From Octopus sinensis (Eukaryota): a stretch of 27,990 nucleotides of DNA. Every line of letters begins with the position of its first letter. Position 1 is the stretch's first letter. Both the position numbers and the translations under genes were made by a program. Below are positions 1 through 27,858 of this stretch, piece by piece. The stretch is taken from NCBI RefSeq assembly GCF_006345805.1, contig NW_021827577.1:1-27990 (forward strand), given 5' to 3'. The notes below the pieces were generated by a model. The model searched no databases. It saw only the letters and a list, made by a program, of their open reading frames with translations, and was not told where the DNA came from.

Positions 1-237
1 CAAGAAATTACAGCCATTCCACATGAAATGACCTGCCAAGTTATTGACACTTTCGTGAACGCCTTCGACAGTCTGTGGACAATAATGGATCCCATTTGAC
101 TGATTTAATTTTTAAAACAATGAAACAAAATGGCATAATATGTATTTTTCAAAAATAAAGACACTTTTTTGTTTCTTTACCTCATTTGCCTTTTATTTAA
201 CCTAAAAATGTGTCAGATCATTTTGCCTGACCCTGTA
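1..237 (+). mobile_element. 3' end of a Tc1/mariner-superfamily (DD37D/maT-like) DNA transposon: transposase C-terminus remnant, right TIR and TA target site
   Basis: 1-150 reads QEITAIPHEMTCQVID-(1-bp frameshift near 50)-FRERLRQSVDNNGSHLTDLIFKT, typical of DD37D transposase C-termini. It ends ...TTTTGCCTGACCCTG|TA (235|236-237), i.e. a CAGGG-type TIR plus TA. Confidence 0.7.
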
Positions 238-255
238 CATACATACATATATATT

Positions 256-1033
256 TTTATTTATTTTTTAAATTTAATTTAATTTTATTTTATCTAGTTT
301 CAGCTCACGAGCTGTGGTCAGGCTGGGGCACCGTCATTCGGTGTTGCTACATGATTTTACTTCACAAATGCTTTTAGCAATTGACATTTGGTGTATGTTG
401 GTTCATTTGGGACACCTGACAGGAAGAGGTCCAGTTTTATTTTAAAGACATCTGCATCCACCCCATGCAGGTCTCTCAGGTCCTTTGGGAGGATATTGAA
501 GAGCTGTGGACCTCTGAAGCCCAGGTTATCACTGTATCTTATCCTACATCTTCATGGCAAATTTGGAGTCCTTGGCACTATGCAGTGGCACCCAGTTCTA
601 GTATTTGTGTAACTCTCGATGCCAAAGTTTGGGACAAGTCCTTCCAGGATTTTCCAGATGTATATTAGGGCATATCTTTCTCGCCTATGCTCAAAGGAAT
701 AGAGTCTTAATCTCTTGAGTCTTTCCCAATAGCTTATACGCTGCACAGAGGTTATCTTCTTCATGTAGCTTAGTTGGATTGCCTCAAGTTCTGTGATTAA
801 TTTGACACTGGTTGGTGACCATAGCTGAGAGCAATAGTCAAAGTGGCTTAGGCCAACTGTCCTCCAGAGGACCATCATGGTTTCCTGGTCTCTTGTTCTA
901 AAAGTTCTATATGGAGGTGGGGGCATTGGCTACTACCACTTGACATCTATCCTTCAAAAAGTCATGAAGTCATTCTCTTAACTACACCGAGATCACACAG
1001 TTTATGACCACATCATTCCATGATTAACTTTAT
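256..1033 (-). mobile_element. 3' fragment of a CR1/L2-group LINE, same family as the element at 5.9-10.3 kb, with internal deletions
   Basis: The minus strand aligns by eye to 9065-10314 (FRTRDQETMMVLW...HFDYCSQLWSP...RLYSFEHRRERY). About 430 bp (equivalent to 9194-9622) and about 50 bp near the ORF2 end are missing. Same 3' terminus GGTGCCCCAGC..CAGCTC-GAGCTGAAACT followed by an A-rich tail. Confidence 0.92.
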
Positions 1034-1036
1034 ACG

Positions 1037-1107
<71 letters not shown>

Positions 1108-1315
1108 TACATATATACATAAATACATATATATTTACATATATACATAAATACATATATATTTACATATATAAATATGTAATTACATATATATATACAT
1201 ATATAATATGTAAATCAATATATACAAATACATATATACATATATAAATATGTAAATCAATATATACATATACATATATACATATATATATACACATACA
1301 TATATAGATATATAT
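1034..1315. repeat. (TA)n microsatellite with TACA variants
   Basis: Direct reading of the sequence. Confidence 0.97.
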
Positions 1316-1475
1316 GAAGTCATAAAACCACACTCCAAGTTTTCCAGCTATGCTGAGGTCACGCAGTTTGTGGCATATCATACCATGATACTCCTTGTCA
1401 AAAGCCTTTGCAAAATCAAGTTAGATTACGTCCACATTTGATTTGTAGAGTAACTGCCTCAACACCCCAGTCATA
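1316..1475 (-). mobile_element. 160-bp RT fragment of a related CR1/L2-group LINE subfamily
   Basis: Minus strand encodes ...[40 protein letters not shown], homologous to about 8989-9147. Both ends merge into TA repeats. Confidence 0.88.
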
Positions 1476-1524
1476 TATATATATATATATACACATATAC
1501 AATATATATATATATACATAACAT

Positions 1525-1598
<74 letters not shown>

Positions 1599-1709
1599 AT
1601 ATATGTATATTATATATATATATTGATATATATATATAATATATATATATATATGTGTGTATATATATATAATGTATATATATATATATATGTATATATA
1701 ATATATATG

Positions 1710-1744
<35 letters not shown>

Positions 1745-1786
1745 TATATGTATATATATATATATATTGTATATATATATAATATG

Positions 1787-1821
<35 letters not shown>

Positions 1822-1873
1822 GTATATATATTATATATATGTATATATATATATATAGATGTATATATATATG

Positions 1874-1911
<38 letters not shown>

Positions 1912-1914
1912 ATG

Positions 1915-1975
<61 letters not shown>

Positions 1976-2344
1976 GTATATATATATGTATATATATATG
2001 TATATATATATGTATATATATATGTATATATATATGTATATATGTATATATATATATATGTATATATATGTATATATATGTGTATATATGTATATGTATA
2101 TATATGTATATATATGTATATATATGTATATATATGTATATATATGTGTATATATATGTATATATATGTGTATATATATGTTATATATGTGATATATATG
2201 TGTATATATGTGTATATATGTATATATATGTGTATATATATGTATATATATGTATATGTATATATATGTATATATATATATATATATGTATATGTATATA
2301 TATGTATATATATATATATGTATATGTATATATATATGTATATG

Positions 2345-2375
<31 letters not shown>

Positions 2376-2509
2376 GTATATGTATCTATATATATAGGTA
2401 TATATATATATGTATATGTATATATATATATTGTATTGTATATATATATATATGTATATATAATATATATATATATGTATATTATATATATATATAGATA
2501 TATATAATG

Positions 2510-2541
<32 letters not shown>

Positions 2542-2563
2542 TATGTATATATAATATATGTAT

Positions 2564-2612
<49 letters not shown>

Positions 2613-2635
2613 TATATATATATATGTATATATAA

Positions 2636-2668
<33 letters not shown>

Positions 2669-4052
2669 GAATATATATATATATGTTATATATATATATG
2701 TATATATATGTATGTATATGATATATTTATATATATATTATGTATATATATTATATATATATATGTATGTATATATATATATCATATGTATGTATATATA
2801 TGTATATATATGTATATATATATGTATATATAGTATATATATATATGTATATAATGTATATATGTATATATATGTATATATAATGTATATATATGTATAT
2901 ATATATAGTATATATATGTATATATATGTGTATATATATGTATATAATATGTATATATGTATATATAATGTATATATATTATATATATATGTATATATAT
3001 GTTATATATGTATTTATATGTTATATGTATATATATGTATATATGTATATATATATGATATATATGTAATATATATGTATATATTGTATATAATATGTAT
3101 ATATATGTAATATATATGTATATATGTATATATATATATGTATATTTGTATATATATATGTATATATATGTATATATATATGTATATATGTATATTATAT
3201 GTATATGTATATATATGTATATATATATGTATATATGTATATATATATGTATATATATGTATATATATATGTATATATATATTGTATATTATGTATATAT
3301 ATGTAATATATATGTATATATAATGTATATATATGTATATATGTATATATATGTATATATATGTATATATATGTATATAAGTATATATATATGTATATAT
3401 ATGTATATATATGTATATATATATGTATATATGTATATATATATGTATATATATATGTATATATGTGTATATATGTATATATATATGTATATATATGTAT
3501 ATATATGTATATATATATGTATATATATGTATATATATGTATATGTATATATATGTATATATATGTATATGTATATATATGTATATATATGTATATGTAT
3601 ATATATGTATATATATGTATATGTATATATATGTATATATGTATATGTATATATATGTATATGTATATATATGTATATATATGTATATGTATATATATGT
3701 ATATATGTAATGTATATATATGTATATATGTATATGTATATATATAATGTATATATATGTATATATATATATGTATATATATGTATATATATATATGTAT
3801 ATATATGTATATATATGTATATATATATATGTATATATATGTATATATATGTATATATATATATATGTATATATGTATATATATGTATATATACATATGT
3901 ATATATATGTATACGTATATATATGTATATATACGTATATATGTATATATATGTATATATATATATATACGTATATATATGTATATATACGTATATATGT
4001 ATATATATGTATATAATATATACGTATATATATGTATATATACGTATATATG

Positions 4053-4084
<32 letters not shown>

Positions 4085-4335
4085 CGTATATATATGTATA
4101 TATATATGTATATATTATGTATACGTATATATATGTATATATACGTATATATGTAATATATGTATATATATATATATACGTATATATAGTATATATACGT
4201 ATATATGTATATATATGTATATATATATATGTATATATATATATACGTATATATATGTATATATATACGTATATATATACGTATATATATGTATATATAT
4301 GTATATATGTATATATATGTATATGTATATATATG

Positions 4336-4386
<51 letters not shown>

Positions 4387-4783
4387 GTATATATATGTAT
4401 ATATATATGGATATATATGTGTATATATATATATATATGTATATATGTATATATATGTATATATATGTATATATATATATGTATATATGTATATATATAT
4501 ATGTATATATATGTATATATATATATGTATATATATGTATATATATATATGTATAATATGTATATATATATATGTATCTATATATATGTATCTTATATAT
4601 GTATATATATATATGTATCTATATATATGTATCTATATATATGTATCTATATATATGTATATATATATATGTATATATATATGTATCTATATATATATGT
4701 ATATATATATGTATCTATATGTATATATATATATGTATATATATATATGTATATATATGTATATGTATATATATATGTATATA
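1476..4783. repeat. About 3.3-kb compound (TA)n / (TATG)-variant microsatellite array
   Basis: Almost continuous alternating purine-pyrimidine sequence with zones of local variants. All Y/I/M/C-rich ORFs here are artefacts of the repeat. Confidence 0.98.
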
Positions 4784-5660: not shown

Positions 5661-5929
5661 TTAGTTTTTATTTTAGAAGACATTGTCTGTAGCGACGGAC
5701 AAATATATATTTTCTTTTCTCTTTTCCTCTGCTTAAATTCTGTAAAATCTCTTGGATTGTTTTCTTTCAGCTATTTCATTATTATTATTATTGTTTCTTT
5801 ATATACTCACTTGGTACTACTGTTTATATATGTGCATGTGCACACATGTGTATATGTGTGTATATGTATGTATGTATACGCGTGTGTGTGTGTGTACAAA
5901 TAGCTTCGTTTAGAATTCTCCCCTCTCTG

Positions 5930-6150
5930 TCTGTCTCTTCAGTTCTCTCCCTCACGCTTCTCCTTGTCTCTTCATAACTCTCATTCTATCTTACTCCCCT
6001 CTTTCAAATATATAAATTCTCTCTATATTTCTTCCTTCTCTCCCTATCTCTTCAGTTTCTCTCCCGCTTCTCCTTGTCTCTCCATTACTCTCTTCTATCT
6101 CTTCAGTTTCTCTCCCGCTTCTCCTTGTCTCTCCATTACTCTCTTCTATC
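5930..6150. repeat. Polypyrimidine 51-bp tandem repeat (two identical copies, 6044-6094 and 6095-6145, plus one diverged upstream copy), probably LINE 5' UTR
   Basis: The unit CTATCTCTTCAGTTTCTCTCCCGCTTCTCCTTGTCTCTCCATTACTCTCTT is read twice directly. A similar unit lies at about 5934-5995. Confidence 0.9.
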
Positions 6151-6378
6151 TTACTCTCCTCTCTCGGATACATATAAGGACATAGACGCTTTCTCTCTCT
6201 TCCTTCAGCTCTCAGTCTCTCCTCTTCCTCTTCTCTCTTACTCTCGGCTCCCAATTTCTCCTTAAGTACATAGACGCTCTCTTTCTCTACTTCCTCCCTA
6301 CCCCCTATTGCACTATTAGATTAATATAAATTAATATAATATAATTAGATAGATAGATAGATAGATAAAATATCAAGA

Positions 6379-7270
6379 ATGTCCAGAACCTGGAAACGTG
6401 ACGAACTGGCGTGGTTCCTGCGAGGATGGCAATGCGCTGACGGAGAAAATCCAAATAATATAATTACGGCTGCGCTGAAGAACAACGGATACAAAAGGAC
6501 GTCAGCTCAAATAGAGCGGAAGAAGCAAGAATTTATACGCTCCTACGCACTTGTCAGATCGCATATTAACACGCTGGATGCCATTTTTGACAGCGAAAAA
6601 CGCGAACAAAGTAAAGCTGGCAAGGATAGAAACGCGGGCACTGATGAGGAGGGTCACCCCCACCTGGTAGACGCCCAGGAAGAAAACTCCAGTGAGAGGC
6701 CTGCCCGGGAGATGAACCCAGGTGCGGATGCTCCTACCAGCACCAAAAGCCATGGACATGGAGATGAAAAACAAAAAAAGAAGAAGAAAAACTGAAGCTA
6801 AAACACAGACAAAGCCAAGGGGCAAGGCAGCCAGGGATAGAGGCAAACCTAACTATCCATATGCCAAAAAGGATGGAAACAAGCAGCGCACACGGGTATG
6901 TAGGTTCTACCTGAAAGGTGCCTGCCGGCATGGAGAGGAAGGTGCAGGCTGCCGCTTTGCACATCCGGGACCCTGCCACAGAAACCAACCACCGAAAGGA
7001 AATGGGATGGACCACGCATCACCTGCCCCAAAACGGAGGTACGCAGATGTGGTGCATACCACAAACCACCAACGTGTTGTTGAAAGGGCAGCTGCTGAGC
7101 AGGAATCTTTTTTGTGCATGGCACAAAAGATTGTACAGCAGCTAACCTGGCTCCATCAGGCTCAGGCTCGCAGATGGAACTGCCCACAGTTCACAAGACC
7201 GCCACAGCAGATGGACCCAGGGTGGACACCGCCGGCAACAGCATACACCTCACCTCGATGCTCCTACTGA
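6379..7270 (+). pseudogene. LINE ORF1 (about 296 aa if one extra A at about 6788-6792 is removed): Myb/SANT(trihelix)-like N-terminus, charged linker, CCCH zinc finger
   Basis: 6379-6795: W..DE...FL..W...I..AL...GY.RT..QI..K...F...Y pattern. The frame-2 continuation contains C-x7-C-x8-C-x3-H (CRFYLKGACRHGEEGAGCRFAH). The two frames join across an A-rich run. Confidence 0.75.
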
Positions 7271-10217
7271 ACATCAGAGGACTACTAACACACAGTAACA
7301 GGACAAAAGTCCCGTTCCTGAGAGACTTTGTCGCATGCAATCAAGCCTTATGCATAGCACTCACAGAAATGCATCTGAAACCGGACATAGCAGATGCAGA
7401 ATTACACATACTACAGTATGTTGTTCTACGGACCGACAGGAAAGAAAGGAGTCATGGAGGAGTTGCTATGTACATCCATGGGGACCTCACACCCCAGGTC
7501 CTTTTGTCATACTCAAACTCGGTGTGTGACACACTAATTGTACACATAAGGCAACTTGATGTAGTTGTGTGTGCTACATATCGCCCTCGAGATGCCCCAA
7601 GTCATATGGGCAAGTTTGAGGACTGCCTTTTAAAAATAGAAGAAGTTCTAATCACATTAGAACAACACATAAGTGTACTTCTCATGGGAGACTTCAATCT
7701 ACCCAATGTCAGATGGCCCGAGGGCCTTTCTCTCCCAGGAATGACAAGATGTGAACGAGGACAGGCGAGGTCCCTCCTGAACCTCATCAACACCCTGTAC
7801 ATGGAGCAAGTAATACTCCAACCAACCAGAGCAGGTAACACACTGGATCTCTGCTTCACAAATAATATGGATCTCATCCATAATGTGAAAGTGACACCGA
7901 CACTACTCTCGGATCACAACATGGTAGAGCTGACCATGTACGGGCCAAAAGAGAGCACAGACATGCAGCCTACAAGAAACCCTCAGAATCTTTCCAGCTT
8001 GAACTTCAATAAGGCAAACTGGAAACAAATTGAGAAAGAGATCCTCAAACAAAACTGGCCTGAATGTCTCTCCTCGCCGGACATCGACATGATACTTCAA
8101 CAATTCATGTCTGTAATGCAAGCCATATGCTACAAATGTGTCCCAGAGAGAAAGGCCATTGTACACAAGAACAAAATCCCCAGAGAGAGGAAAATTTTAA
8201 TGAGACGGCGTACAAAAATTTCAAATCGCCTAAACAAACAAATTGAAAGCAGTGAAAAGTCCCGCCTGAAAATAAAACTGTTAGAAATTGAAAATTGTCT
8301 GCAACTCTCCCATGAGAAGGAGAGAGCAGACAAAGAAGCCTGGGCTATAGACAACATAAAAACTAACCCCAGAGCTTTCTACAGGTATGCCAAAGAAACA
8401 GCTACGGTGTACTGTAGGATAGGGCCACTCCTTGAAAAGGATGGCACACTCACAGGAAAACCAATGAGGGTAAGTGAAATACTGAATGAACAATTCAAGA
8501 GTGTTTTCACTCCACCCCTTGGGCATGTCCAAATCAGCAATCCAACTGACTTCTTTACCACTGCAGATATAGAATCAGAGGCGGCGACGATAAATTACAT
8601 CGATATAAAGGAAGACGATGTAATAAAGGCTATAGATGAAATGAAAACAGACTCAGCTATTGGCCCCGATGGATTCCCGGCAATCCTCCTAAAAGTATGT
8701 AAGAGAGTCCTAGCAAGACCACTGCAGTTCCTCTTTCAGAGCTTCCTTGCAGCTGGCAAACTTCCAAGAAAATTGAAGGAAGGTAAAATATGCCCTATTC
8801 ATAAAGGAGGTAGCAGAGCGGAGGCCAAGAACTACAGACCTATCTCTCTGACCTCACACATCAGCAAGGTCATGGAACGAATAGTCAGAAGGAAACTAAT
8901 CACCTTCCTTGAAGAAAATGACTTGCTGCCTGACACCCAACATGGTTTCCGACCAGGAAGAAGCTGCTTAACTCAGCTCCTGCAGCACTATGACTGGGTG
9001 CTGAAACAACTGCTCAACCACTCAAATGTGGAAGTCATATATCTCGACTTCGCAAAGGCCTTCGATAAAGTCGATCATGGAATGATATGTCACAAACTGC
9101 GTGATCTTGGCTTAGTTGGAAAACTAGGAGAATGGCTTCATGACTTTCTGAAGAATAGAAGTCAGGTGGTAGCAGCCAACCAACCACTTCCATTAGCATG
9201 CAAATAGTGAGCGGTGTTCCACAGGGCACCGTTTTGGGAACACTACTGTTCATAATGGCCCTCTCAGACATGCCCTCAGCCACACGGAGAGCCACGATCA
9301 CAAGTTATGCAGATGATACAAAAGTTTCACAGGCAATACAGAACCCTGAAGACACTAAGCACCTGCAATGTGAGCTGGACGAAATATACAAGTGGGCTGA
9401 AAAGAATAGCATGCAGTTCAATGCTGAAAAGTTTCAAGCTTTATACTATCAGCATGCAAAACTGAATGCAATACCCAATGAATACACTGGACCCGGAGGG
9501 ATTGCAATCCCAGAGGCACGATCAGTGCGTGACCTGGGTATTCACATGAGTGATGACGCGACCTTTCATGTACATGTTGCTAAACTGACAATGAAATGCA
9601 GACAGCTGGCTGGCTGGATTCTTAGAACCTTTAGAACAAGAGAACAAGAAACCATGATGGTCCTCTGGAAGACACTTGTCCTAAGCCACTTTGACTATTG
9701 CTCTCAGCTATGGTCACCATCCAGTGTCAAGTTGATCACAGAACTTGAGGCGATCCAACGAAGCTACACGAAGAAGATAGCCTCTGTGCAGCATATGAGC
9801 TACTGGGAGAGACTCAAGAGTTTAAAGCTCTATTCCCTGGAGCGTAGGCGAGAAAGATATGCCATAATATATATCTGGAAGATCCTGGAAGGTCTTGTCC
9901 CAGACTTTGGCATCGAGAGTCACACAAACGCCAGAACCGGATGCCACTGCGTAGTACCAAGGACTCCAAATTTGCCATCAAGATGTAGGACATGATATTG
10001 TGATAGCCTGGGCTTCAGAGGCCCACGGCTCTTCAATGTCCTCCCGAAGAACCTGAGAGACCTGCATGGTGTAGATGCGGATGTCTTTAAAGTAGGACTG
10101 GATCTCTTCCTGTCAGGTGTCCCGGATGAACCAACTTCACGGCAGGAGGTGCAGATGAGGGCAGCTGCATCAAACTCTCTCATGCATCAGATGGCGTTTG
10201 CTAAAAAGCATCCGTGA
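7258..10217 (+). pseudogene. LINE ORF2: apurinic-like endonuclease plus reverse transcriptase, with one frameshift (about 9181) and one premature TGA (9993-9995)
   Basis: APE motifs LNIRGL, LTEMHL, MGDFN, LDLCF, SDHN. RT motifs [44 protein letters not shown]. The frame continues past the TGA through ...VPDEP...RAAASNSL to a stop at 10215-10217. Confidence 0.95.
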
Positions 10218-10314
10218 GGTAAACCCGTGTAGCAAACCAAATGGCGGTGCCCCAGCATGGCCACAGCTCATTAGCTGAAACTGGAAAAATCAGAAATCAA
10301 AATCAAAATCAAAT

Positions 10315-10597
10315 ATGTATATTATATATGTATATAATATATATATATAATATATATATGTATATTAATATGTATATAATATATATAATATATATATGTA
10401 TATTATATATGTATATAATATATATATATAATATATATATGTATATTATATATGTATATAATTATATATATATAATATATATATGTATATATATATATAT
10501 ATATAATATATATATGTATATAATATATATATATAATATATATATGTATATAATATATATATATAATATATATATGTATATAATATATATATATGAT
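10315..10597. repeat. (TA)n microsatellite with TAA/TG interruptions
   Basis: Direct reading; lies between the LINE tail and the RTE tail. Confidence 0.96.
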
Positions 10598-10765
10598 ATC
10601 ATCATCATCATCATCATCATTTAGCGTCCGCTTTCCATGCTAGTATGGGTTGGACGGTTCAACTGGGGTCTATGAAGCCAGAAGGCTGCATCAGGCCCAG
10701 TCTGATCTGGCAGTGTTTCTACGGCTGTATGCCCTTCCTAACGCCAACCACTCCGTGAGTGTAGT

Positions 10766-10985
10766 GGGTGCTTTTTACATGCCACCCGCACAGGTTCCAG
10801 ACGGAGCTGGCAAATGGCCACGGACGGATGGTGCTTTTTATGTTCCACCGGCACGGAGGCCAGGCGAGGCTGGCAATGGCCACGATTGGATGGTGCTTTT
10901 TACGTGCCACCAGCACGGAGGCCAGTCGGGGCGGCACTGGCAACGGCCACAGTCGGATGGTTTGCTTACTTGTCATCGGCACTGG
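10766..10985. repeat. About 60-67-bp imperfect tandem repeat (3 copies plus a partial) in the RTE 3' UTR
   Basis: GG(A)TGGTGCTTTTTA..TGCCACC.GCAC...CTGGCAA.GGCCAC recurs at about 10766, 10826, 10888 and 10955. Confidence 0.9.
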
Positions 10986-11170: not shown

Positions 11171-14102
11171 CTAGTCTTGCCGGGTCTTCTCATGCACAGC
11201 ATACTTCCATAGGTCTCGGTCTCTAGTCATTTCCTTGGTGAGACCTAAAGTACGAAGGTCGTGCTTCACCACCTTGTCCCAGGTTTTCCTGGGTCTACCT
11301 CTTCCACAGGTTCCCTCAACTGCTAGGGTGTGGTACTTTTGCACACAACTATCTTCAGCCATTCTCGTCACATGACCATACCAGCGCAAACGTCTCTCTT
11401 GCACACCACAACAGATGCTTCTTAGGTCCAACTTTTCTCTCAAGGTACTTACACTCTGTTGATTATGAACACTGACATTACACGTCCATCGGAGCATACT
11501 GGCTTCATTTCTTGCAAGCTTACGCATATCCTCAGCAGTCACAGCCCATGTTTCACTACCATGTAGCGTGGCTGTATGTACACATGCATCATACAGTCTG
11601 CCTTTTACTCCGAGCAAGAGGCCTTTTGTAACCAGCAGGGGTAAGAGCTCTCTAAACTTTGCCCAGGCTATTCTTACTCTAGCAGTTACACTTTCAGCAC
11701 ACCCACTCCCGCTACTGACTTGGTCACCTAGGTAGCAGAAGCTATCAACTACTTCTAGTTTTTCTCCCTGGAACGTGGTAGAAGTTGGTCTCTGCACATT
11801 TTCAGTGTTTATTTCTCCTGAGCATCTGCCACAGACAGAAACTATTTTGCCAGTTAGCCTTCCTTTGACATTGCTACACCTCTTATGTGTCCATAGCTTA
11901 CACTTGGTGCACCTTATAGAGTTTCTACCTAGCCTTTTTTACAGATCGAGCAGGGCCATCTACCTGAAGGCGTTTGTGATTGTTCTACCTTCCTACTTAT
12001 TTGGACTTTGGTTTTGACTAGGTTGATTCTGAGGCCCTTCGATTCTAAACCTTGCTTCCACACTTGAAACTTCTCCTCCAGTTCTGATAGTGACTCAGCA
12101 ATTAGAGCAAGGTCATCAGCATAAAGGAGCTTCCAGGGGCATCCTGTCTTGAATTCCTCCGTTATTGCCTAGAGGACTATGATAAATAGGAGGGGACTGA
12201 GGACTGAACCTTGGTGGACCCCTACCTCTACCCGGAATTCTTCACTGTACTCGTTGCCAACCCTCACCTTACTAGCAGCGTCTCTGTACATGGCTTGCAC
12301 AGCTCTCACTAACCATTCATCTATCCCTAGTTTCCTCATTGACCACCAGATACGGGATCGGGGGACTCTGTCGAAGGCTTTCTCCATGTCAACAAAAGCC
12401 AGGTACAGGGGCTTATCTTTGGCTAGGTATTTCTCCTGCCGCTGTCTTACCAGGAATATAGCATCAGTAGTACTTTTCCCTGGCACGAACCCAAACTGCA
12501 TCTCATCTAAGCTAACTCTCTCTCTAATTAATTGGGCTATGACCCTCTCCGTAACCTTCATTACCTGATCCAGCAGCTTGATACCCCTGTTGTTATTTGT
12601 ATCTAGGGTGTCACCTTTACCTTTGTAGCATTTGACTATTATGCTGCTACACTAGTCATTGGGTATGACTCCTTCGTGTATCACCTGGTTAACTATACGG
12701 GTGACTAGGCTATAGCCGACACTACCAGATATTTTGAGCATCTCTGCAGTAATTCCTGATGGGCTTTCCCTGTTTTCATGCTTGTAATTGCCTTAACTAC
12801 TAAGGAACTGTCAACTCGGATTGCTGGTCCCTCTGTTGGGTCGACATTCTGCAGACTCTCTTTATCCCATTCATTTTCCTCATTCAGCAACCTTTCATAG
12901 TAGCGTCTCCAAACCTCTCTCTTTGCATCCTCATTTAACGCAAGTGAACCATCATCCATGCGAACACATTTCTCTCCTACCACATCATGATTCTCTCTCA
13001 CACACTGTCTTGCAACATGAAATACCTCAAGTGTTTCATCCTCACGGCGCAGAACATTGGCAAATTTTTTCTTATCTGCTTCCCCTCTGGCTAAATATAC
13101 CTGCCTCCTAGCTTCCCTTCTGGCAGTCTGATACACTTCACTGCTACCACCGTTCTTCCAGTCCTTCCAAGCCTGTTTCTTCTGTCTAATAGCCCTGTCA
13201 ACAATATTGTTCCACCTCCACGTCATTTTGGGTCTTCAGGGGACTTTGCACCAGCCACAGATCTGGTCAGTGGCTTTCAGCAGGTTGTCCCTTAGAAGCG
13301 TCCAGTTGTTTTCTACCCCATGTGTAGCTATACTCCCTTCTATTTCGTCAAAGGCTTCAAGTAATATGTCTCTAAATCTCTGTCCATTCCCAGGGTCTTT
13401 AAGCTTCTAGACCCTTCTTCTCCATGTTGGTCGTCTTCTAGTCGTCCTCTTAGTCCTGATCCTAAAGTCGCTAACTACCAGTCTATGTTGTGGGGTACAT
13501 TCTTCACCTGGGAAGGTTTTAGCATTTATAAGCAGCCATCTTTCCTTTTTTCTGGCAAGGATGTAGTTGATATGGCTAGTATGCCGGCCTGATCGGTAGG
13601 TGACCAAGTGGCTTGTCGGTTTCCTGAAGTTAGTGTTGCAAACCATAAGACTATTCGCATCACAGAACTCCAGCAGCCTGGTTCCCTCCTCATTGCGGGA
13701 ACCATAACTGTAGCCTCCATGTACGCCATGGAAGCCCCCAGCATATCGTCCAACATGCCCATTGAAGTCACCAGCCACAAAGAGAAGGTCCCTGTCATAC
13801 GTCAATGAGGTGGTCTGCAGTAGGGTGTCATAGAAACGGTCTTTCTGTCCATCGGGTAGCCCTGGCTGAGGTGCATAGGCCGATATAATAGTTGCTAAAC
13901 TATGATGGAGCACTAATCTAATCTTCAGTATTTTGTCACATACTCTGACTACCTCGATTACCTTATCTACCCATTTTTCGGCGATAAGTATACCCACACC
14001 CCCGACCCCATCAGTATTCCCAGCCCAGAAAATCTTGTTCCTCTGTTCTTTGTCTGTGAGGAACCTAGCAGAACCTCCTCTCCACCTCACTTCTTGAATA
14101 CA
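11171..14102 (-). pseudogene. RTE ORF: APE endonuclease, RT, PHD-finger insertion and C-terminal domain, with several frameshifts and stops
   Basis: APE: GVGILI, AYAPQ, AGDFNGHVG. RT: QFGFVPGKST, FVDMEKAFDRVP, GVHQGSVLSPLLF, LLYADD. C-terminus: FCYLG, RRLRWYGHV, GRGRPRKTW. Stop at 11171-11173. Confidence 0.93.
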
Positions 14103-14186: not shown

Positions 14187-14364
14187 TATATATATATAAT
14201 ATATATATATATAATATATATATATAATATATATAATATATATATATTATATATATATAATATATATATAATATATATAATATAAACATATATAATATTA
14301 TATATATATAATATATATAATATATATATATATAATATATATAATATATACATATATATATATA

Positions 14365-14405
<41 letters not shown>

Positions 14406-14443
14406 TATATATATTCATATACATATATATATATATATACATA
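14187..14443. repeat. (TA)n microsatellite with TAA interruptions
   Basis: Direct reading. Confidence 0.96.
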
Positions 14444-21244: not shown

Positions 21245-21350
21245 ATATGCACTGCTTTAGTGAATGTTTCAGTCTTCCTTTACAAAATATAGTGAAAATG
21301 GTTGAAAAAGAAATGTTACATTTAAACTGCTTAGAATGCATAACTGTTAT

Positions 21351-21810
21351 AAATTCTGGGTAGAGCTAGGGGTCCACCAAGGTTCGGTCCTCAGCCCCCT
21401 ACTATGTTTCATAGTCCTCCAGGCAATAATGGAGGAATTCAAGACAGGATGCCCCTGGGAGCTCCTCTATGCTGACAACCTTGCTCTAATTGCTGAGTCA
21501 CTATCAGAACTAGAGGAGAAGTTTCAGGTGTGGAAGCAAGGATTAGAATCGAAAAGTCTTAGAGTCAACCTAGCTAAAACCAAAGTCCTAATAAGTAGGA
21601 AGGCAGACAAACCACAAATCCCTTCAGGTAGTTGGCCTTGCTCGATCTGTAGAAAAAGCATAGGTAGAAACTCTATAAGATGTATGCAATGTAAGCTATG
21701 GACACATAAGAGGTGCAGCAATATCAAAGGAAGGCTAACTAGGAAGATAGTTTTTGTATGTGGCAGATGCTCAGGAGCAATAAACACTGAAAATGTGCAG
21801 AGAACAACTT
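21351..21810 (+). mobile_element. Internal fragment of the same RTE family (RT C-terminal half plus PHD finger)
   Basis: GVHQGSVLSPLL...WELLYADN...WPCSICRK..RCMQCKLWTHKRC...VCGRC, colinear with 11778-12236 in the opposite orientation. Confidence 0.93.
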
Positions 21811-22340
21811 GAGGACTCTTGTCATGGCTTCCTTCATCTTCAGAATGACTACCCTTGATGTTCACCTTCAGACTGTCAAGTAGTTGGTTACCAGGGTGTT
21901 TGTCACTCAGCGTCCAGGAAACAAATTTCGCACATGTGCAGATCTTGATAAATAATTCTGTGTACAGTTGCTACACCATCTCCAGTCTGTATGTATATTA
22001 TATTTATAGATACACAATGGTCTTCATCCAGAAAATTATGAATTTTCTCAACCAGCCCTGATGTTCTGACAGCCTTCTCCCTCTCGCATCTCTCATTGTC
22101 ACTCACTTCATCTCGAGCAATTTCAATCCTTTTGTGAAAAAGTTAATCCATAGGTAGTCTGGAGCATTTTCTGAACTTCTGTAGCATTTTTACCTAATTT
22201 AACACAAAGCACTGTTGCATAGTGAGCTTCCAAACATTCTGATTGCATTCTGTAAGTTAGTCTACTGTGACAAGCTGTGTTTAGTCACAGCCATCTTCAA
22301 TCTAGAATAACAAAATTTGCCAAGTCAGCTTATTAAATGT
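21811..22340 (-). mobile_element. Internally deleted mariner (DD34D) relic
   Basis: Minus strand: CVKLGKNATEVQKMLQTTYG, then D.ER...VRTSGLVEKI...VATVHRII..DL.M (HTH region), joined directly to a C-terminal KMKEAMTRVL-like stretch. The catalytic core is absent. Confidence 0.75.
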
Positions 22341-24223: not shown

Positions 24224-25118
24224 TTGGGTCATCCCATAAATAATGTGGGTTTTTTATACTTCTTTTATTTTTCAAAATTAAGATAAACAAAGTTGTTTTG
24301 TAATCTAAAAAATATACTCTCCTTCATTTTCTACAATGCTCTTCCATCTATCTGCTAAACTTGCAAGGCCCCTCTTCCAAAATTCATTTGTCTGTGATTA
24401 AAAATACTCCTCCAGTATTGTTCTGGCCTCATCTACAGAATTCATATGTTTTCCATCGTAATGATTTTGAAGACTGCAGAATAATTGATAATCAGATGGG
24501 GCAAAGTCCATCAAATATGGTGGATGGGGCATTGTTTTCCATTCAAACTGCTCCAGCCTTTGGAATGTCATCCTCGCTGTATGTAGCCAAGCATTATCCT
24601 GATGGAAGAACACCTTGAAACCAAAGATAGTTGTTTTTCTTCTAGCGCTGACTTGAATGACTGGTTTAATACCCAAAATCCAAGATTTTCTGCTAGTTCC
24701 TCAACAGTTATGATGAGATTTTATTCCACTGGGGTTTGTAGGAGTCTCTCATCGAGCTCTACAAACCTTCCAAGATGACGCTCATTTTCTAAGCAGTAGT
24801 TTCTGGCTTGGAATTTCTGGAATCACCATTGATACTGGTTTACACTTATTGTCCGATCCCCATACACTGCATTAATATTCCTTGCACTTTCTGTTGTTTT
24901 GTTGCCTGAATATGCTCCTTTGTCACTTCCTTTATAGCTTTGAAAAAAATAACTGTTAAAATCGAACTACACCCTTCAAAATTAGCACTAAGAATAAGGT
25001 AACAAGGTAAAATTACTACCTGCTTTTATAGCAAGTTCATGCAGGCAGTTTATCCTATCCCCTTCCAACTTTTAGTTCATGCAATTGAAAAAACTGCATT
25101 ATTTATGGGATGGCCCAA
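24224..25118 (-). mobile_element. Internally deleted mariner element (895 bp) with both TIRs and TA duplications
   Basis: TA|TTGGGTCATCCCATAAATAATG at 24222 and CATTATTTATGGGATGGCCCAA|TA at 25118 (1 mismatch in 22). HTH region ATESARNINAVYGD..., then FHQDNA.LH and PHPPY..DFAPSDY. The segment with the first catalytic Asp is missing. Confidence 0.93.
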
Positions 25119-27503: not shown

Positions 27504-27804
27504 CACCACAATCGCCGTAACTGACCAGGCTATCAGATGTTGCTACACATCGCTGCGCTTCACATGGTTTTAGCCTTCAAATGATGCCACCCCACTGGCT
27601 AAGTGAGCAGGCCAACAGAAGGAAGAGTGATAGAAAGTCGTGGCGAAAGAGTACGGCAGGGATTGCCACCATCCCCTGCTGGAACCTCGTAGAGCTTTTA
27701 GGTGTTTTCACTCGATAAACACTCACAACGCCTGGTCTGGGAATAAAAACCGCGATCCTACAGCCGCGAGTCTGCTGCCCTAACCACAGGGTCATTGCGC
27801 CTCC
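27503..27804 (-). mobile_element. tRNA-derived SINE (octopus OR-type)
   Basis: Minus strand begins GGAGGCGCAATGACCCTGTGGTTAGGGCAGCAGACTCGCGG..., with Pol III A-box-like TGACCCTGTGG and B-box-like GGTTTTTATTCCC. Flanked by (TA)n and (CA)n. Confidence 0.85.
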
Positions 27805-27858
27805 ACACACACACACACACATATATTTATTTATATGCAGATATATATATATTTATAT

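What the first reader, a model, noticed from the sequence alone, without database searches (positions are those of the whole stretch)
6379..7270. LINE ORF1 built from a Myb/SANT(trihelix)-like DNA-binding domain plus a CCCH RNA-binding zinc finger
Seen: the first 60 aa or so (TWKRDELAWFLRGW...IITAALKNNGYKRTSAQIERKKQEFIRSY) follow the W..E...LL..W....I...L...G..RT..QC..K...L...Y pattern of Myb/SANT-like trihelix domains. After a 1-base slip in an A run, the ORF carries C-x7-C-x8-C-x3-H. Established: CR1/L2/Jockey ORF1 proteins usually use RRM, CCHC knuckles, PHD or esterase modules; Myb/SANT modules are better known from Harbinger transposons and the N-termini of R2-type proteins. Inference: this ORF1 may bind both DNA and RNA, and could steer insertion, for example to the TA arrays where this family sits. 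I do not recall this architecture being described, but cannot exclude it.
Basis: partly seen in the sequence, partly recalled or inferred. Interest (0 to 1): 0.78.

Follow-up and report, generated by a model that had tools for sequence, protein, structure and literature searches.

The report
Octopus LINE ORF1: Myb-like plus CCCH
A decayed octopus jumping gene (a LINE retrotransposon) has a first protein built from a plant-trihelix-type Myb/SANT DNA-binding fold plus a CCCH zinc finger, a domain combination absent from the LINE surveys I could search, and its copies sit in TA-repeat arrays.

Summary
Window 6379-7270 is ORF1 of a dead copy of an endonuclease-plus-reverse-transcriptase LINE; the nearest proteins are from Octopus. 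ORF1 is broken by one extra base in an A-run (6773-6779). A close O. sinensis copy reads straight through that point. Relatives elsewhere carry intact ORF1s of 289-371 aa with the same layout, directly upstream of the endonuclease ORF.

The layout is:
- an N-terminal three-helix domain;
- a disordered linker, acidic then basic;
- one C-x7-C-x8-C-x3-H finger;
- a conserved C-terminal helix.

Four lines of evidence point to a Myb/SANT-like (Pfam Myb_DNA-bind_4, trihelix) N-domain:
- it is the only recurrent Pfam family, hit by 10 of 21 members, one above the curated cut-off;
- the family profile pulls genuine Myb_DNA-bind_4 proteins out of 1.84 billion sequences;
- hhalign gives 96.5% probability;
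- the top PDB fold match of a confident AlphaFold model is the Arabidopsis GT-1 trihelix domain, although that match is not significant on its own.

The finger is CCCH-type with a three-residue longer second loop. Seven of eight 3' ends, and most 5' junctions, abut (TA)n. Binding of DNA or RNA, and any role in steering insertion, are untested. No description of this architecture was found; Repbase and Dfam could not be searched. In passing, I found a conserved slippery heptamer where ORF2 overlaps ORF1.

The parts
5915..6378 (+). Putative 5' UTR of the LINE copy: CT-rich, with 51-bp tandem repeats at 6037-6165. The 5' boundary is approximate.
   Evidence: TRF and the sequence. Sister-family copies also have a CT-rich leader before ORF1. 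No nucleotide homology to those leaders was found.
6379..6594 (+). ORF1 residues 1-72: Myb/SANT-like (Myb_DNA-bind_4, trihelix-type) three-helix domain.
   Evidence: Pfam: only hit, E 0.12. Family level: 10 of 21 members hit it, best E 2e-7. AF2 pLDDT 82-97, helices 7-19, 25-35 and 42-80. Top Foldseek PDB hit is 2jmw, the GT-1 DNA-binding domain. hhalign 96.5%.
6595..6898 (+). Poorly conserved, predicted-disordered linker: acidic part 6595-6762, basic part 6763-6892 (net charge +12, resembles a nuclear localisation signal).
   Evidence: AF2 pLDDT 41-53; not alignable between families; charge.
6773..6779 (+). A7 run holding the copy-specific 1-base insertion that splits ORF1 (frame 1 stops at 6793-6795).
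   Evidence: P0001 reads through in one frame with the same spacing. L002 and the intact relatives are continuous here.
6899..6964 (+). CCCH-type zinc finger, C174-x7-C182-x8-C191-x3-H195 (numbering of the merged ORF1).
   Evidence: the same spacing in L001, L002, L003, L004, L006, L007, L009. Pfam zf_CCCH_4 E 2.3e-4, below cut-off. The family consensus passes zf_CCCH_4 and zf-CCCH. Genuine CCCH proteins P0037-39 were retrieved.
7064..7177 (+). Conserved C-terminal helix of ORF1 (AAxEQxSFLxMAQxIVxxLTWxH); candidate oligomerisation helix. It overlaps the ORF2 reading frame.
   Evidence: AF2 helix 229-266, pLDDT 88-94; conservation; no Pfam match.
7108..7114 (+). T TTT TTG heptamer in the ORF1 frame: candidate -1 ribosomal frameshift site into ORF2.
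   Evidence: An X XXY YYZ heptamer lies at the same motif in 5 of 5 lineages. The -1 frame is open from 7099. No conserved downstream RNA structure was found.
7099..9207 (+). ORF2, first piece (-1 frame relative to ORF1): endonuclease about 7351-7917, start of the reverse transcriptase 8797-9168.
   Evidence: Pfam Exo_endo_phos_2 1.8e-10, RVT_1 4.6e-15; frame analysis.
9198..10217 (+). ORF2, second piece after a frameshift near 9198-9207: rest of the reverse transcriptase (9210-9542) and the C-terminal region. It is interrupted by an in-frame TGA at 9993-9995; the true stop is at 10215-10217.
   Evidence: comparison with the ORF2 C-terminus of L002.
10253..10312 (+). Conserved 3' end (CAGCATGGCCRCAGCTC..GCTGAAACTGG, 10253-10284) followed by a short copy-specific tail of (AAATC)-like repeats (10285-10312).
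   Evidence: the same end in 8 copies, each with a different short tail.
10313..10599 (+). TA-rich microsatellite abutting the 3' tail; probably target DNA.
   Evidence: TRF. 7 of 8 3' ends are followed by (TA)n, against a background of about 10% of positions.
236..1475 (-). Older 5'-truncated fragments of the sister LINE family (236 to about 1036, and 1316-1475), embedded between TA arrays (1037-1315 and 1473-4783).
   Evidence: blastn against L001 and L002; sequence; TRF.

Best explanation
The interval is ORF1 of a dead copy of an octopus LINE family that encodes an apurinic-type endonuclease and a reverse transcriptase. The intact protein is about 290-370 aa.

It has five parts:
- an N-terminal Myb/SANT-like three-helix domain of the Myb_DNA-bind_4 (GT-1 trihelix) type;
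- a disordered linker, acidic then strongly basic;
- one CCCH-type zinc finger with an enlarged second loop;
- a short YADAV-like motif;
- a conserved C-terminal helix.

Proposed mechanism (inferred). The CCCH finger and the basic linker bind the element's own RNA, as ORF1 proteins of other LINEs do. The C-terminal helix makes the protein oligomerise on that RNA. The basic stretch takes the particle into the nucleus. The Myb/SANT-like domain, which has a basic third helix, contacts double-stranded DNA and helps bring the particle to the (TA)n microsatellites in which the copies are found. There the ORF2 endonuclease nicks the DNA and reverse transcription is primed.

Shown here: the architecture, its conservation, its position upstream of ORF2, the homology of both domains, and the association with TA arrays. 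Inferred: every binding activity, and the link between the Myb-like domain and the choice of target. My rough odds are 0.9 for the architecture and homology, 0.6 for nucleic-acid binding by both modules, and 0.3 for the Myb-like domain being what selects TA arrays.
For: Architecture:
- The same order of modules is seen in the window, in O. vulgaris loci L001, L002, L007 and L009, and in intact ORFs P0015 (371 aa), P0025 (291 aa) and P0027 (289 aa).
- ORF2 follows directly: the L003 endonuclease is 62% identical and the L006 one 65% identical to the window's.
- Conservation is concentrated in the N-domain, the finger and the C-terminal helix, while the linker is free. This is what is expected of functional modules.

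Myb/SANT homology:
- Pfam Myb_DNA-bind_4 is hit by 10 of 21 N-domains; no other family is hit by more than one. The best is P0033 at 29.3 bits, above the cut-off of 27.
- The family consensus gives E 1.6e-3, the only hit.
- A profile of 3 N-domains retrieved P0035 (three Myb_DNA-bind_4 repeats, 105 bits in Pfam) and P0028 from 1.84e9 proteins at E below 1e-3.
- hhalign gives probability 96.5%, E 1e-9.
- The AF2 N-domain has pLDDT 82-97. The top Foldseek PDB hit is 2jmw, the GT-1 trihelix DNA-binding domain: probability 0.87, TM 0.53, rmsd 2.8 A.
- The N-domain is basic, with a median pI of 9.45.

CCCH. A distant relative (L005) has the Myb-like domain followed by three CCCH-like fingers, one with the canonical spacing.

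TA arrays: 7 of 8 3' ends show a short copy-specific tail and then (TA)n. 5' junctions next to TA runs are seen in L001, L002, L008 and L009. Background is about 10%.
Against: - The window's own N-domain scores far below Pfam's cut-off (13-14 bits against 27).
- No Foldseek match reaches E 0.001; three-helix bundles are common and the GT-1 hit has E 0.78.
- A profile search of PDB sequences gave only weak, irrelevant hits to ribosomal protein uS8.
- The hhalign template was made from proteins that the family profile itself had selected.
- SANT-type relatives of Myb domains bind proteins or histones rather than DNA, so the fold does not prove DNA binding.
- In well-studied site-specific LINEs with an apurinic-type endonuclease, target choice lies largely in the endonuclease (established knowledge, not tested here).
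- The TA sample is about 8 copies from TA-rich loci. One copy (L002) has no 3' TA array, and several 5' boundaries are approximate.
- The C-terminal 'helix' region is also constrained by the overlapping ORF2 frame, so its conservation is not purely about ORF1 protein function.
Confidence: 0.6

Rival explanations
1. The architecture is the same, but the Myb/SANT-like domain does not choose the target. It works as a SANT-type protein or chromatin contact, or as a further RNA-binding surface. The TA-array association would then come from the cleavage preference of the ORF2 endonuclease for TA-rich DNA, and from annealing of the A/T-rich RNA tail to the nicked target.
For: The fold alone does not tell DNA binding from protein binding. 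The ZZZ3 Myb-like/SANT-type domain 2yum matches about as well (TM 0.56) as GT-1. The endonuclease determines the target in R1-clade site-specific LINEs (established knowledge). The 3' tails are A/T-rich.
Against: The nearest sequence family, Myb_DNA-bind_4, is typified by a sequence-specific DNA binder (GT-1), and its third helix is strongly basic here (net +4, pI 10.9). Nothing here tests the endonuclease.
Confidence: 0.3
2. The (TA)n arrays are not targets. They are the element's own 3' microsatellite tail, as in CR1-group LINEs, or later microsatellite expansion seeded by that tail. On this view no targeting needs explaining.
For: TA arrays follow the 3' end in most copies and vary from 0 to more than 300 bp. 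TA runs cover 4.6% of the loci examined.
Against: A short, copy-specific non-TA tail, such as (AAATC)n, (AATC)n or A9, lies between the conserved 3' end and the TA run. TA runs also abut the 5' junctions of L001, L002, L008 and L009, and the truncated 5' end of the minus-strand fragment in the window.
Confidence: 0.2
3. The Myb/SANT resemblance is a chance match of a generic three-helix bundle, and the N-domain is an orphan LINE-specific module.
For: Individual scores are weak for the window copy. Foldseek E-values are not significant.
Against: Independent methods converge on one family and no other. One member passes Pfam's curated cut-off, and a source database had already annotated it PF13837.
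Confidence: 0.07
4. 6379-6795 is not part of the LINE. It would be an unrelated upstream ORF, or a captured host fragment peculiar to this copy.
For: In the window it is in a different frame from the CCCH part.
Against: Both parts are joined in one ORF in P0015, P0025, P0027 and L002, and in the same order in every locus examined.
Confidence: 0.02

Closest known systems
GT-1 / trihelix Myb/SANT-like domain (Pfam PF13837 Myb_DNA-bind_4; PDB 2JMW)
   Same: Three helices with a long third helix. The W-x3-E...W hydrophobic pattern and the R-T-x2-Q-x3-K-x3-[LF]-x3-Y signature. It is the only recurrent Pfam match and the top fold match.
   Different: It is not a host transcription factor here but the N-terminus of a retrotransposon ORF1. 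The window copy scores below Pfam's cut-off. DNA binding is untested.
LINE ORF1 protein types I-V (Khazina & Weichenrieder 2009, as summarised in Metcalfe & Casane 2014, PMC4120745)
   Same: First ORF of an endonuclease-plus-reverse-transcriptase LINE, basic, with a zinc-binding module and a predicted helix that could drive oligomerisation. ORF1s are known to be modular and shuffled.
   Different: None of the catalogued modules (RRM, CCHC knuckle, coiled coil-RRM-CTD, PHD, esterase, zf/lz) was detected. It would fall into 'type V, unclassified'. Myb/SANT and CCCH are not in that survey, which contained no cephalopod elements.
Myb-like DNA-binding motifs in other non-LTR elements: the R2 N-terminal zinc finger + Myb, and the Myb-like region in ORF2 of TRAS/SART/R1 (recalled from the literature; R2 is reviewed in PMC12203849, which I listed but did not read)
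   Same: A Myb-type helix bundle carried by a retrotransposon that inserts into a repeated target.
   Different: In those elements the motif is part of the reverse-transcriptase protein, not of a separate ORF1, and is of the classical Myb type rather than the Myb_DNA-bind_4 type. No sequence comparison was made here.
Myb/SANT-like second ORF of PIF/Harbinger DNA transposons (recalled)
   Same: A transposon-encoded Myb/SANT-like accessory protein thought to guide the catalytic protein to DNA.
   Different: That is a DNA transposon, with no zinc finger and no reverse transcription. Not compared here.
Microsatellite-targeting LINEs, e.g. Togen (TG)n and some HERO families (PMC4640811); Waldo, Mino, Kibi, Koshi, Dong (Kojima & Fujiwara 2004, recalled)
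   Same: Copies are flanked on both sides by one kind of microsatellite.
   Different: The target here would be (TA)n. The sample is small and the element's clade is unresolved. The named families have other ORF1s or none.
CCCH zinc fingers (Pfam zf-CCCH PF00642, zf_CCCH_4 PF18345)
   Same: The C..C..C...H ligands, aromatic and basic residues around them, and the CRF-x-HP ending. It is 57-69% identical to genuine fingers.
   Different: The second loop has 8 residues instead of 4-5. It is a single finger in a LINE ORF1.

Membership tests
Myb/SANT-like, Pfam Myb_DNA-bind_4 (trihelix type) | Match to the Pfam profile at or above the gathering score (27 bits) | tested here: inconclusive
   Window copy 13.2-14.2 bits and family consensus 19.3 bits: below the cut-off but the only hit. 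Family member P0033 scores 29.3 bits, above it. 10 of 21 members hit at E<=1.
Myb/SANT-like, Pfam Myb_DNA-bind_4 (trihelix type) | Homology to accepted members shown by profile methods | tested here: met
   The family profile finds P0035 (105 bits to PF13837) and P0028 at E 7e-4 and 6e-6 in 1.84e9 proteins. hhalign gives 96.5%; the template was chosen by the same profile.
Myb/SANT-like, Pfam Myb_DNA-bind_4 (trihelix type) | Three-helix fold superposable on a solved member | tested here: met
   AF2 helices 7-19, 25-35 and 42-80, pLDDT 82-97. The top PDB hit is 2jmw (GT-1), TM 0.53, rmsd 2.8 A over 65 columns, but E 0.78.
Myb/SANT-like, Pfam Myb_DNA-bind_4 (trihelix type) | Binds double-stranded DNA | not testable with these tools
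   Only the basic charge of helix 3 is known.
CCCH zinc finger | Ligand spacing C-x7-8-C-x4-5-C-x3-H | tested here: not met
   The spacing is C-x7-C-x8-C-x3-H in all copies: the second loop is 3 residues longer than canonical. The distant relative L005 has one canonical C-x8-C-x5-C-x3-H finger.
CCCH zinc finger | Profile match to CCCH families | tested here: inconclusive
   Window: zf_CCCH_4 21.6 bits (cut-off 29) and zf-CCCH 18.1 bits (cut-off 20.5). Family consensus: 29.5 and 21.8 bits, just above both. Genuine CCCH proteins were retrieved by the family profile.
CCCH zinc finger | Binds zinc and single-stranded RNA | not testable with these tools
   None.
LINE ORF1 protein | Encoded immediately 5' of the endonuclease + reverse-transcriptase ORF on the same strand, in many copies | tested here: met
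   Window; L001, L002, L007, L009; L003 and L006.
LINE ORF1 protein | Contains one of the catalogued ORF1 modules (RRM, CCHC, Transposase_22, PHD, esterase) | tested here: not met
   No such Pfam hits even at E<=1.
CR1 group / Jockey superfamily of LINEs | Placement of the reverse transcriptase in that clade by phylogeny (RTclass1 or Repbase references) | not tested
   No reference set was available. The PDB gives only L1 and R2 as distant relatives. The ORF2 C-terminal ...YSLERRRERY...WKILEG motif resembles CR1-group elements from memory only.
Microsatellite-specific LINE | The same microsatellite on both sides of independent insertions, above background | tested here: inconclusive
   3' side: 7 of 8 copies. 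5' side: L001, L002, L008, L009 and the minus-strand fragment in the window. Background is about 10%. The sample is small and no empty sites were examined.
Programmed -1 ribosomal frameshift (gag-pol type) | Slippery X XXY YYZ heptamer in the upstream frame, with the -1 frame open from there | tested here: met
   T TTT TTG/A in the window, L003, L006 and L002; A AAT TTT in L004. The -1 frame is open from 7-82 nt upstream in 4 of 5.
Programmed -1 ribosomal frameshift (gag-pol type) | Conserved stimulatory stem-loop or pseudoknot 5-9 nt downstream | tested here: not met
   RNAalifold consensus -1.6 kcal/mol. Single-sequence z-scores run from -1.55 to +1.27. Pseudoknots were not searched.

The most novel reading that the evidence does not exclude
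A cephalopod LINE lineage has replaced the usual ORF1 modules with a trihelix-type Myb/SANT DNA-binding domain plus a CCCH finger. The Myb-like domain reads (TA)n microsatellites and so directs insertion into them. ORF2 is made as an ORF1-ORF2 fusion by -1 frameshifting at a conserved U UUU UUR site, so the targeting domain travels on the same polypeptide as the endonuclease and reverse transcriptase.
Probability: 0.15. Interest if true: 0.75.

Novelty: new variant of a known kind. Interest (0 to 1): 0.55.

Why it matters
ORF1 proteins are the least understood part of LINEs. Their known repertoire is small: RRM, CCHC, coiled coil, PHD and esterase.

A conserved ORF1 that pairs a DNA-binding-type fold with an RNA-binding-type finger would add a new type. 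It would also offer a simple, testable case of target choice contributed by ORF1 rather than by the endonuclease. This family visibly piles up in (TA)n arrays, and octopus genomes are known for their transposon expansion.

If the Myb-like domain does read (TA)n, it would parallel the way R2 and Harbinger elements use Myb-type modules. It would also be of practical interest for targeted insertion tools.

If it does not, the finding is still a clean new ORF1 class for transposon annotation in cephalopods. At present these proteins are labelled 'hypothetical' or are fused into host gene models, as with the LPIN3 model P0001.

Tried and rejected
- PDB sequence searches with the single protein and with the N-domain profile gave only weak, irrelevant hits (UgpB, ribosomal protein uS8).
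- Single-sequence AlphaFold gave a poor model (pLDDT 50). It was superseded by the alignment-based model.
- The word-indexed protein search with the full alignment returned few hits, probably because the low-complexity linker swamped it. The C-terminal module search found nothing beyond the family and generic CCCH proteins.
- I tried to name the LINE clade. PDB relatives are only L1 and R2. The supplements of the gastropod and Jockey-superfamily papers hold no labelled reference sequences I could use. The clade is left unresolved.
- I tried to find the source assembly by exact look-up of the 138-aa ORF; it is not on record. The sample accessions of L003-L006 are not mentioned in the paper library, so the host range beyond Octopus is unknown.
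- The 5' end of the window copy could not be fixed by homology to sister-family leaders.
- A search for a frameshift-stimulating RNA structure downstream of the slippery site found none that is conserved.
- The idea that ORF1a is an unrelated upstream ORF was rejected.
- Literature searches for Myb/SANT or CCCH in LINE ORF1s found no description. One search failed on syntax, and Khazina & Weichenrieder 2009 is not held.
Full report
**What is at 6379-7270**

The window is animal DNA rich in simple repeats. The nearest relatives of the proteins encoded here come from Octopus sinensis and O. vulgaris.

On the plus strand, an ATG-initiated ORF of 138 aa (6379-6795) is followed, one base out of frame, by an open frame that runs to a stop at 7268-7270. 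Immediately downstream, overlapping it in the -1 frame, lies an ORF2. It has an Exo_endo_phos/Exo_endo_phos_2 endonuclease domain (E 1.8e-10) and an RVT_1 reverse transcriptase (E 4.6e-15 and 3.5e-10 for the two halves).

This copy is dead. It carries the ORF1 frameshift, a second frameshift in the reverse transcriptase near 9198-9207, and an in-frame TGA at 9993-9995.

**Is ORF1 one ORF?**

Removing one A from the A7 run at 6773-6779 gives 296 aa. Three independent observations support this reading.

- A copy 82% identical, which NCBI's annotation has fused to the end of an O. sinensis LPIN3 gene model (P0001), reads ...HGHGDERTKKGRKTEAKTQ in one frame across the break, with the same number of residues as the mended window reading.
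- In O. vulgaris locus L002 the sister family reads in one frame from the end of the N-domain through the linker, finger and C-terminus.
- An exhaustive profile search found complete ORFs with both halves: P0015 (371 aa), P0025 (291 aa) and P0027 (289 aa).

P0015 and P0027 lie on short contigs on which the next ORF is an endonuclease 62% and 65% identical to the window's. The 'single ORF of about 296 aa' is therefore confirmed, and the break is specific to this copy.

**Anatomy**

The alignment of 26 relatives and an AlphaFold model built on it agree on five parts:

| Residues | Feature | AlphaFold pLDDT |
|---|---|---|
| 1-72 | three helices (7-19, 25-35, 42-80) | 82-97 |
| 73-171 | unalignable linker, first acidic then very basic (net +12) | 41-53 |
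| 174-195 | Cys-x7-Cys-x8-Cys-x3-His | 75-82 |
| ~219-225 | a short R-x-Y-A-D-A-V-like motif | not assessed |
| 229-266 | helix with the motif AAxEQxSFLxMAQxIVxxLTWxH, then a Pro/Gln-rich tail | 88-94 |

Conservation is concentrated in the three folded parts. That is the pattern expected of functional modules joined by a spacer.

**Is the N-domain Myb/SANT-like?**

For the window copy alone the evidence is thin. Pfam Myb_DNA-bind_4 is the only hit, at E 0.12 and 13 bits against a cut-off of 27. At family level it is much stronger.

- Of 21 N-domains scanned one by one, 10 hit Myb_DNA-bind_4, and no other family is hit by more than one. The best, P0033, scores 29.3 bits, above the curated cut-off, and a source database had already labelled it PF13837.
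- The family consensus hits only this family (E 1.6e-3).
- A profile of just three N-domains, run against 1.84 billion representative proteins, returned 31 hits at E below 1e-3. These were family members plus two outsiders that Pfam confirms as Myb_DNA-bind_4 proteins: P0035, with three repeats at 105 bits, and P0028, with five repeats.
- A profile-profile comparison with those repeats gives 96.5% probability. The caveat is that the template was selected by the family's own profile.
- The best Foldseek match of the model in the whole PDB is 2jmw, the DNA-binding domain of Arabidopsis GT-1, which is the type member of the trihelix group (probability 0.87, TM 0.53, rmsd 2.8 A over 65 columns). 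A classical Myb-like domain (ZZZ3, 2yum) is also in the list. No match is significant by E-value, the best being 0.78.

Four methods pointing at the same family, and at no other, make chance unlikely. I accept the assignment at about 0.9. It establishes ancestry and fold, not DNA binding.

**Is the finger CCCH?**

The ligand pattern is kept in every copy examined. The window scores below the Pfam cut-offs (zf_CCCH_4 21.6 bits, zf-CCCH 18.1 bits), while the family consensus just passes both (29.5 and 21.8 bits).

A profile of the C-terminal half retrieves genuine CCCH proteins whose finger, VCRFFLTGSCRHGAACRFAHPGPG, differs from the window's VCRFYLKGACRHGEEGAGCRFAHPGPC mainly by three fewer residues in the second loop.

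A more distant relative (L005, the locus of P0033) has the Myb-like domain followed, in another frame, by three CCCH-like fingers, one with the canonical C-x8-C-x5-C-x3-H spacing. So this is a CCCH-type finger with a non-canonical loop length.

**The TA arrays**

The conserved 3' end, CAGCATGGCCRCAGCTC..GCTGAAAC, occurs eight times in the window and the fetched loci. It is followed by a short tail that differs from copy to copy: (AAATC)n, (AATC)n, A9 or (TAAAAGAG)n. In seven of the eight, a TA run of 12 to more than 300 bp comes next. Only about 10% of positions in these loci have such a run within 60 nt.

TA runs also abut the 5' junctions of L001, L002, L008 and L009. In the window, two old minus-strand fragments of the sister family (236 to about 1036, and 1316-1475) are embedded between TA arrays, one of them the 3.3-kb array at 1473-4783.

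Two features favour insertion into (TA)n over a self-made TA tail: the non-TA tail between the element and the array, and TA on both sides. The sample is small, several 5' ends are approximate, one copy lacks the array, and no empty site was examined. I rate this as suggestive.

**How it probably works**

By analogy with other ORF1 proteins (established knowledge), the finger and the basic linker would bind the element's RNA. The C-terminal helix would drive oligomerisation, and the basic stretch nuclear entry. The Myb/SANT-like domain, whose third helix is strongly basic (pI 10.9), is the obvious candidate for a DNA contact. Given where the copies sit, it may help to hold the particle on TA-rich DNA.

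All of this is inference. The main rival is that the endonuclease and tail-target annealing explain the TA association, and that the N-domain has a SANT-like protein or chromatin role, or an RNA role.

**Comparison with what is known**

The ORF1 classification (types I-V) and the survey of 448 Jockey-superfamily elements list these modules: RRM, CCHC, coiled coil/Transposase_22, PHD, esterase and a zf/lz motif. Neither Myb/SANT nor CCCH is listed, and no cephalopod element was included (PMC4120745).

A 2026 study of CR1-group elements in vertebrates reports only esterase ORF1s, plus one ORF1 'with no detectable similarity' (PMC13343379). The work on octopus brain LINEs concerns single-ORF RTE elements and a Dong element (PMC9115989). 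Full-text searches combining ORF1 or LINE with Myb, SANT, Myb_DNA-bind_4 or CCCH found no description.

Microsatellite-targeting LINEs are an established phenomenon (PMC4640811). From memory, Myb-type modules are known in the reverse-transcriptase proteins of R2 and of TRAS/SART, and in the accessory protein of Harbinger transposons, but not in an ORF1.

I could not search Repbase or Dfam, and the LINE clade is unresolved. On this evidence the finding is a new variant of a known kind: a new ORF1 domain architecture. It is not a new kind of element.

**Noticed in passing: a possible frameshift site**

ORF2 is in the -1 frame relative to ORF1 in all five lineages compared. It overlaps the last 110-280 nt of ORF1 and has no conserved AUG.

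Exactly at the conserved S/A/N-F-L of the ORF1 C-terminal helix the codons spell a classical slippery heptamer in the ORF1 frame:

- T TTT TTG in the window (7108-7114) and in L003;
- T TTT TTA in L006 and L002;
- A AAT TTT in L004.

The -1 frame is open from just upstream of the site in four of the five. No conserved downstream stem-loop was found.

This is a candidate programmed -1 frameshift that would make an ORF1-ORF2 fusion, and it is unproven. It also means that part of the conservation of the 'C-terminal helix' may be due to the overlapping frame and the slippery site, not only to ORF1 protein function.

**Verdict**

- Observation: confirmed.
- Structural interpretation: supported.
- Functional interpretation: plausible but untested.
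- Novelty: moderate.
- Interest: 0.55.

Noticed in passing
window 7099-7270 (heptamer 7108-7114); L003 about 998, L006 732, L004 843, L002 about 8639: ORF2 lies in the -1 frame, overlaps the end of ORF1 and has no conserved AUG. A slippery X XXY YYZ heptamer (T TTT TTG/A, or A AAT TTT) sits at the same conserved S-F-L codons in 5 of 5 lineages. This is a candidate -1 frameshift producing an ORF1-ORF2 fusion. No conserved downstream RNA structure was found.
   Followed up: partly
window 1037-1315, 1473-4783, 10313-10599, 14187-14443; 3' ends in L001, L007, L008, L009: Copies of this LINE group are flanked by (TA)n arrays: 7 of 8 3' ends, after a short copy-specific non-TA tail, and several 5' junctions. 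This suggests insertion into TA microsatellites. The window holds a 3.3-kb (AT)n array.
   Followed up: partly
window 236 to about 1036 and 1316-1475, minus strand: Two older, 5'-truncated fragments of the sister LINE family (75-94% identical to O. vulgaris copy L001) are embedded between TA arrays. This looks like repeated insertion into the same array.
   Followed up: partly
window 11171-14090, minus strand: A second, unrelated LINE with a single ORF, now broken into pieces (13407-14090, 12705-13226, 12169-12561, 11171-11797). Only the 12169-12561 piece was confirmed, as RVT_1 at E 6e-17. The 13407-14090 piece looks like an endonuclease by eye and was not scanned. The C-terminal ...RRLRWYGHV... 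motif suggests an RTE-type element, from memory. A TA array (14187-14443) lies next to its 5' end.
   Followed up: partly
window 21336-21812, plus strand: Another reverse-transcriptase-like ORF fragment (…GVHQGSVLSPLL…YADNLALIA…) followed by a Cys-rich motif. It is probably a further RTE-like LINE remnant.
   Followed up: no
window 10767-10945: A 62-bp tandem repeat (2.9 copies, GC-rich) just downstream of the LINE's TA array. Its origin is unknown.
   Followed up: no
P0001 (O. sinensis 'phosphatidate phosphatase LPIN3, partial'): The last 70 or so residues of this public gene model are LINE ORF1 linker sequence. This is a likely annotation artefact in which a transposon fragment was taken as a terminal exon.
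   Followed up: partly
L005 (GCA_024449705.1, contig JAANSU013389877.1) 38-965: A distant relative from an unidentified genome. A Myb_DNA-bind_4-positive N-domain is followed, after a low-complexity stretch and in another frame, by three CCCH-like fingers, one with the canonical spacing. The Myb + CCCH pairing is therefore older and wider than the octopus families.
   Followed up: partly
window 24421-25118 and 27614-27807: Further repeats shared with the O. vulgaris locus L001 outside the LINE (76-86% identity). They are unclassified interspersed repeats.
   Followed up: no
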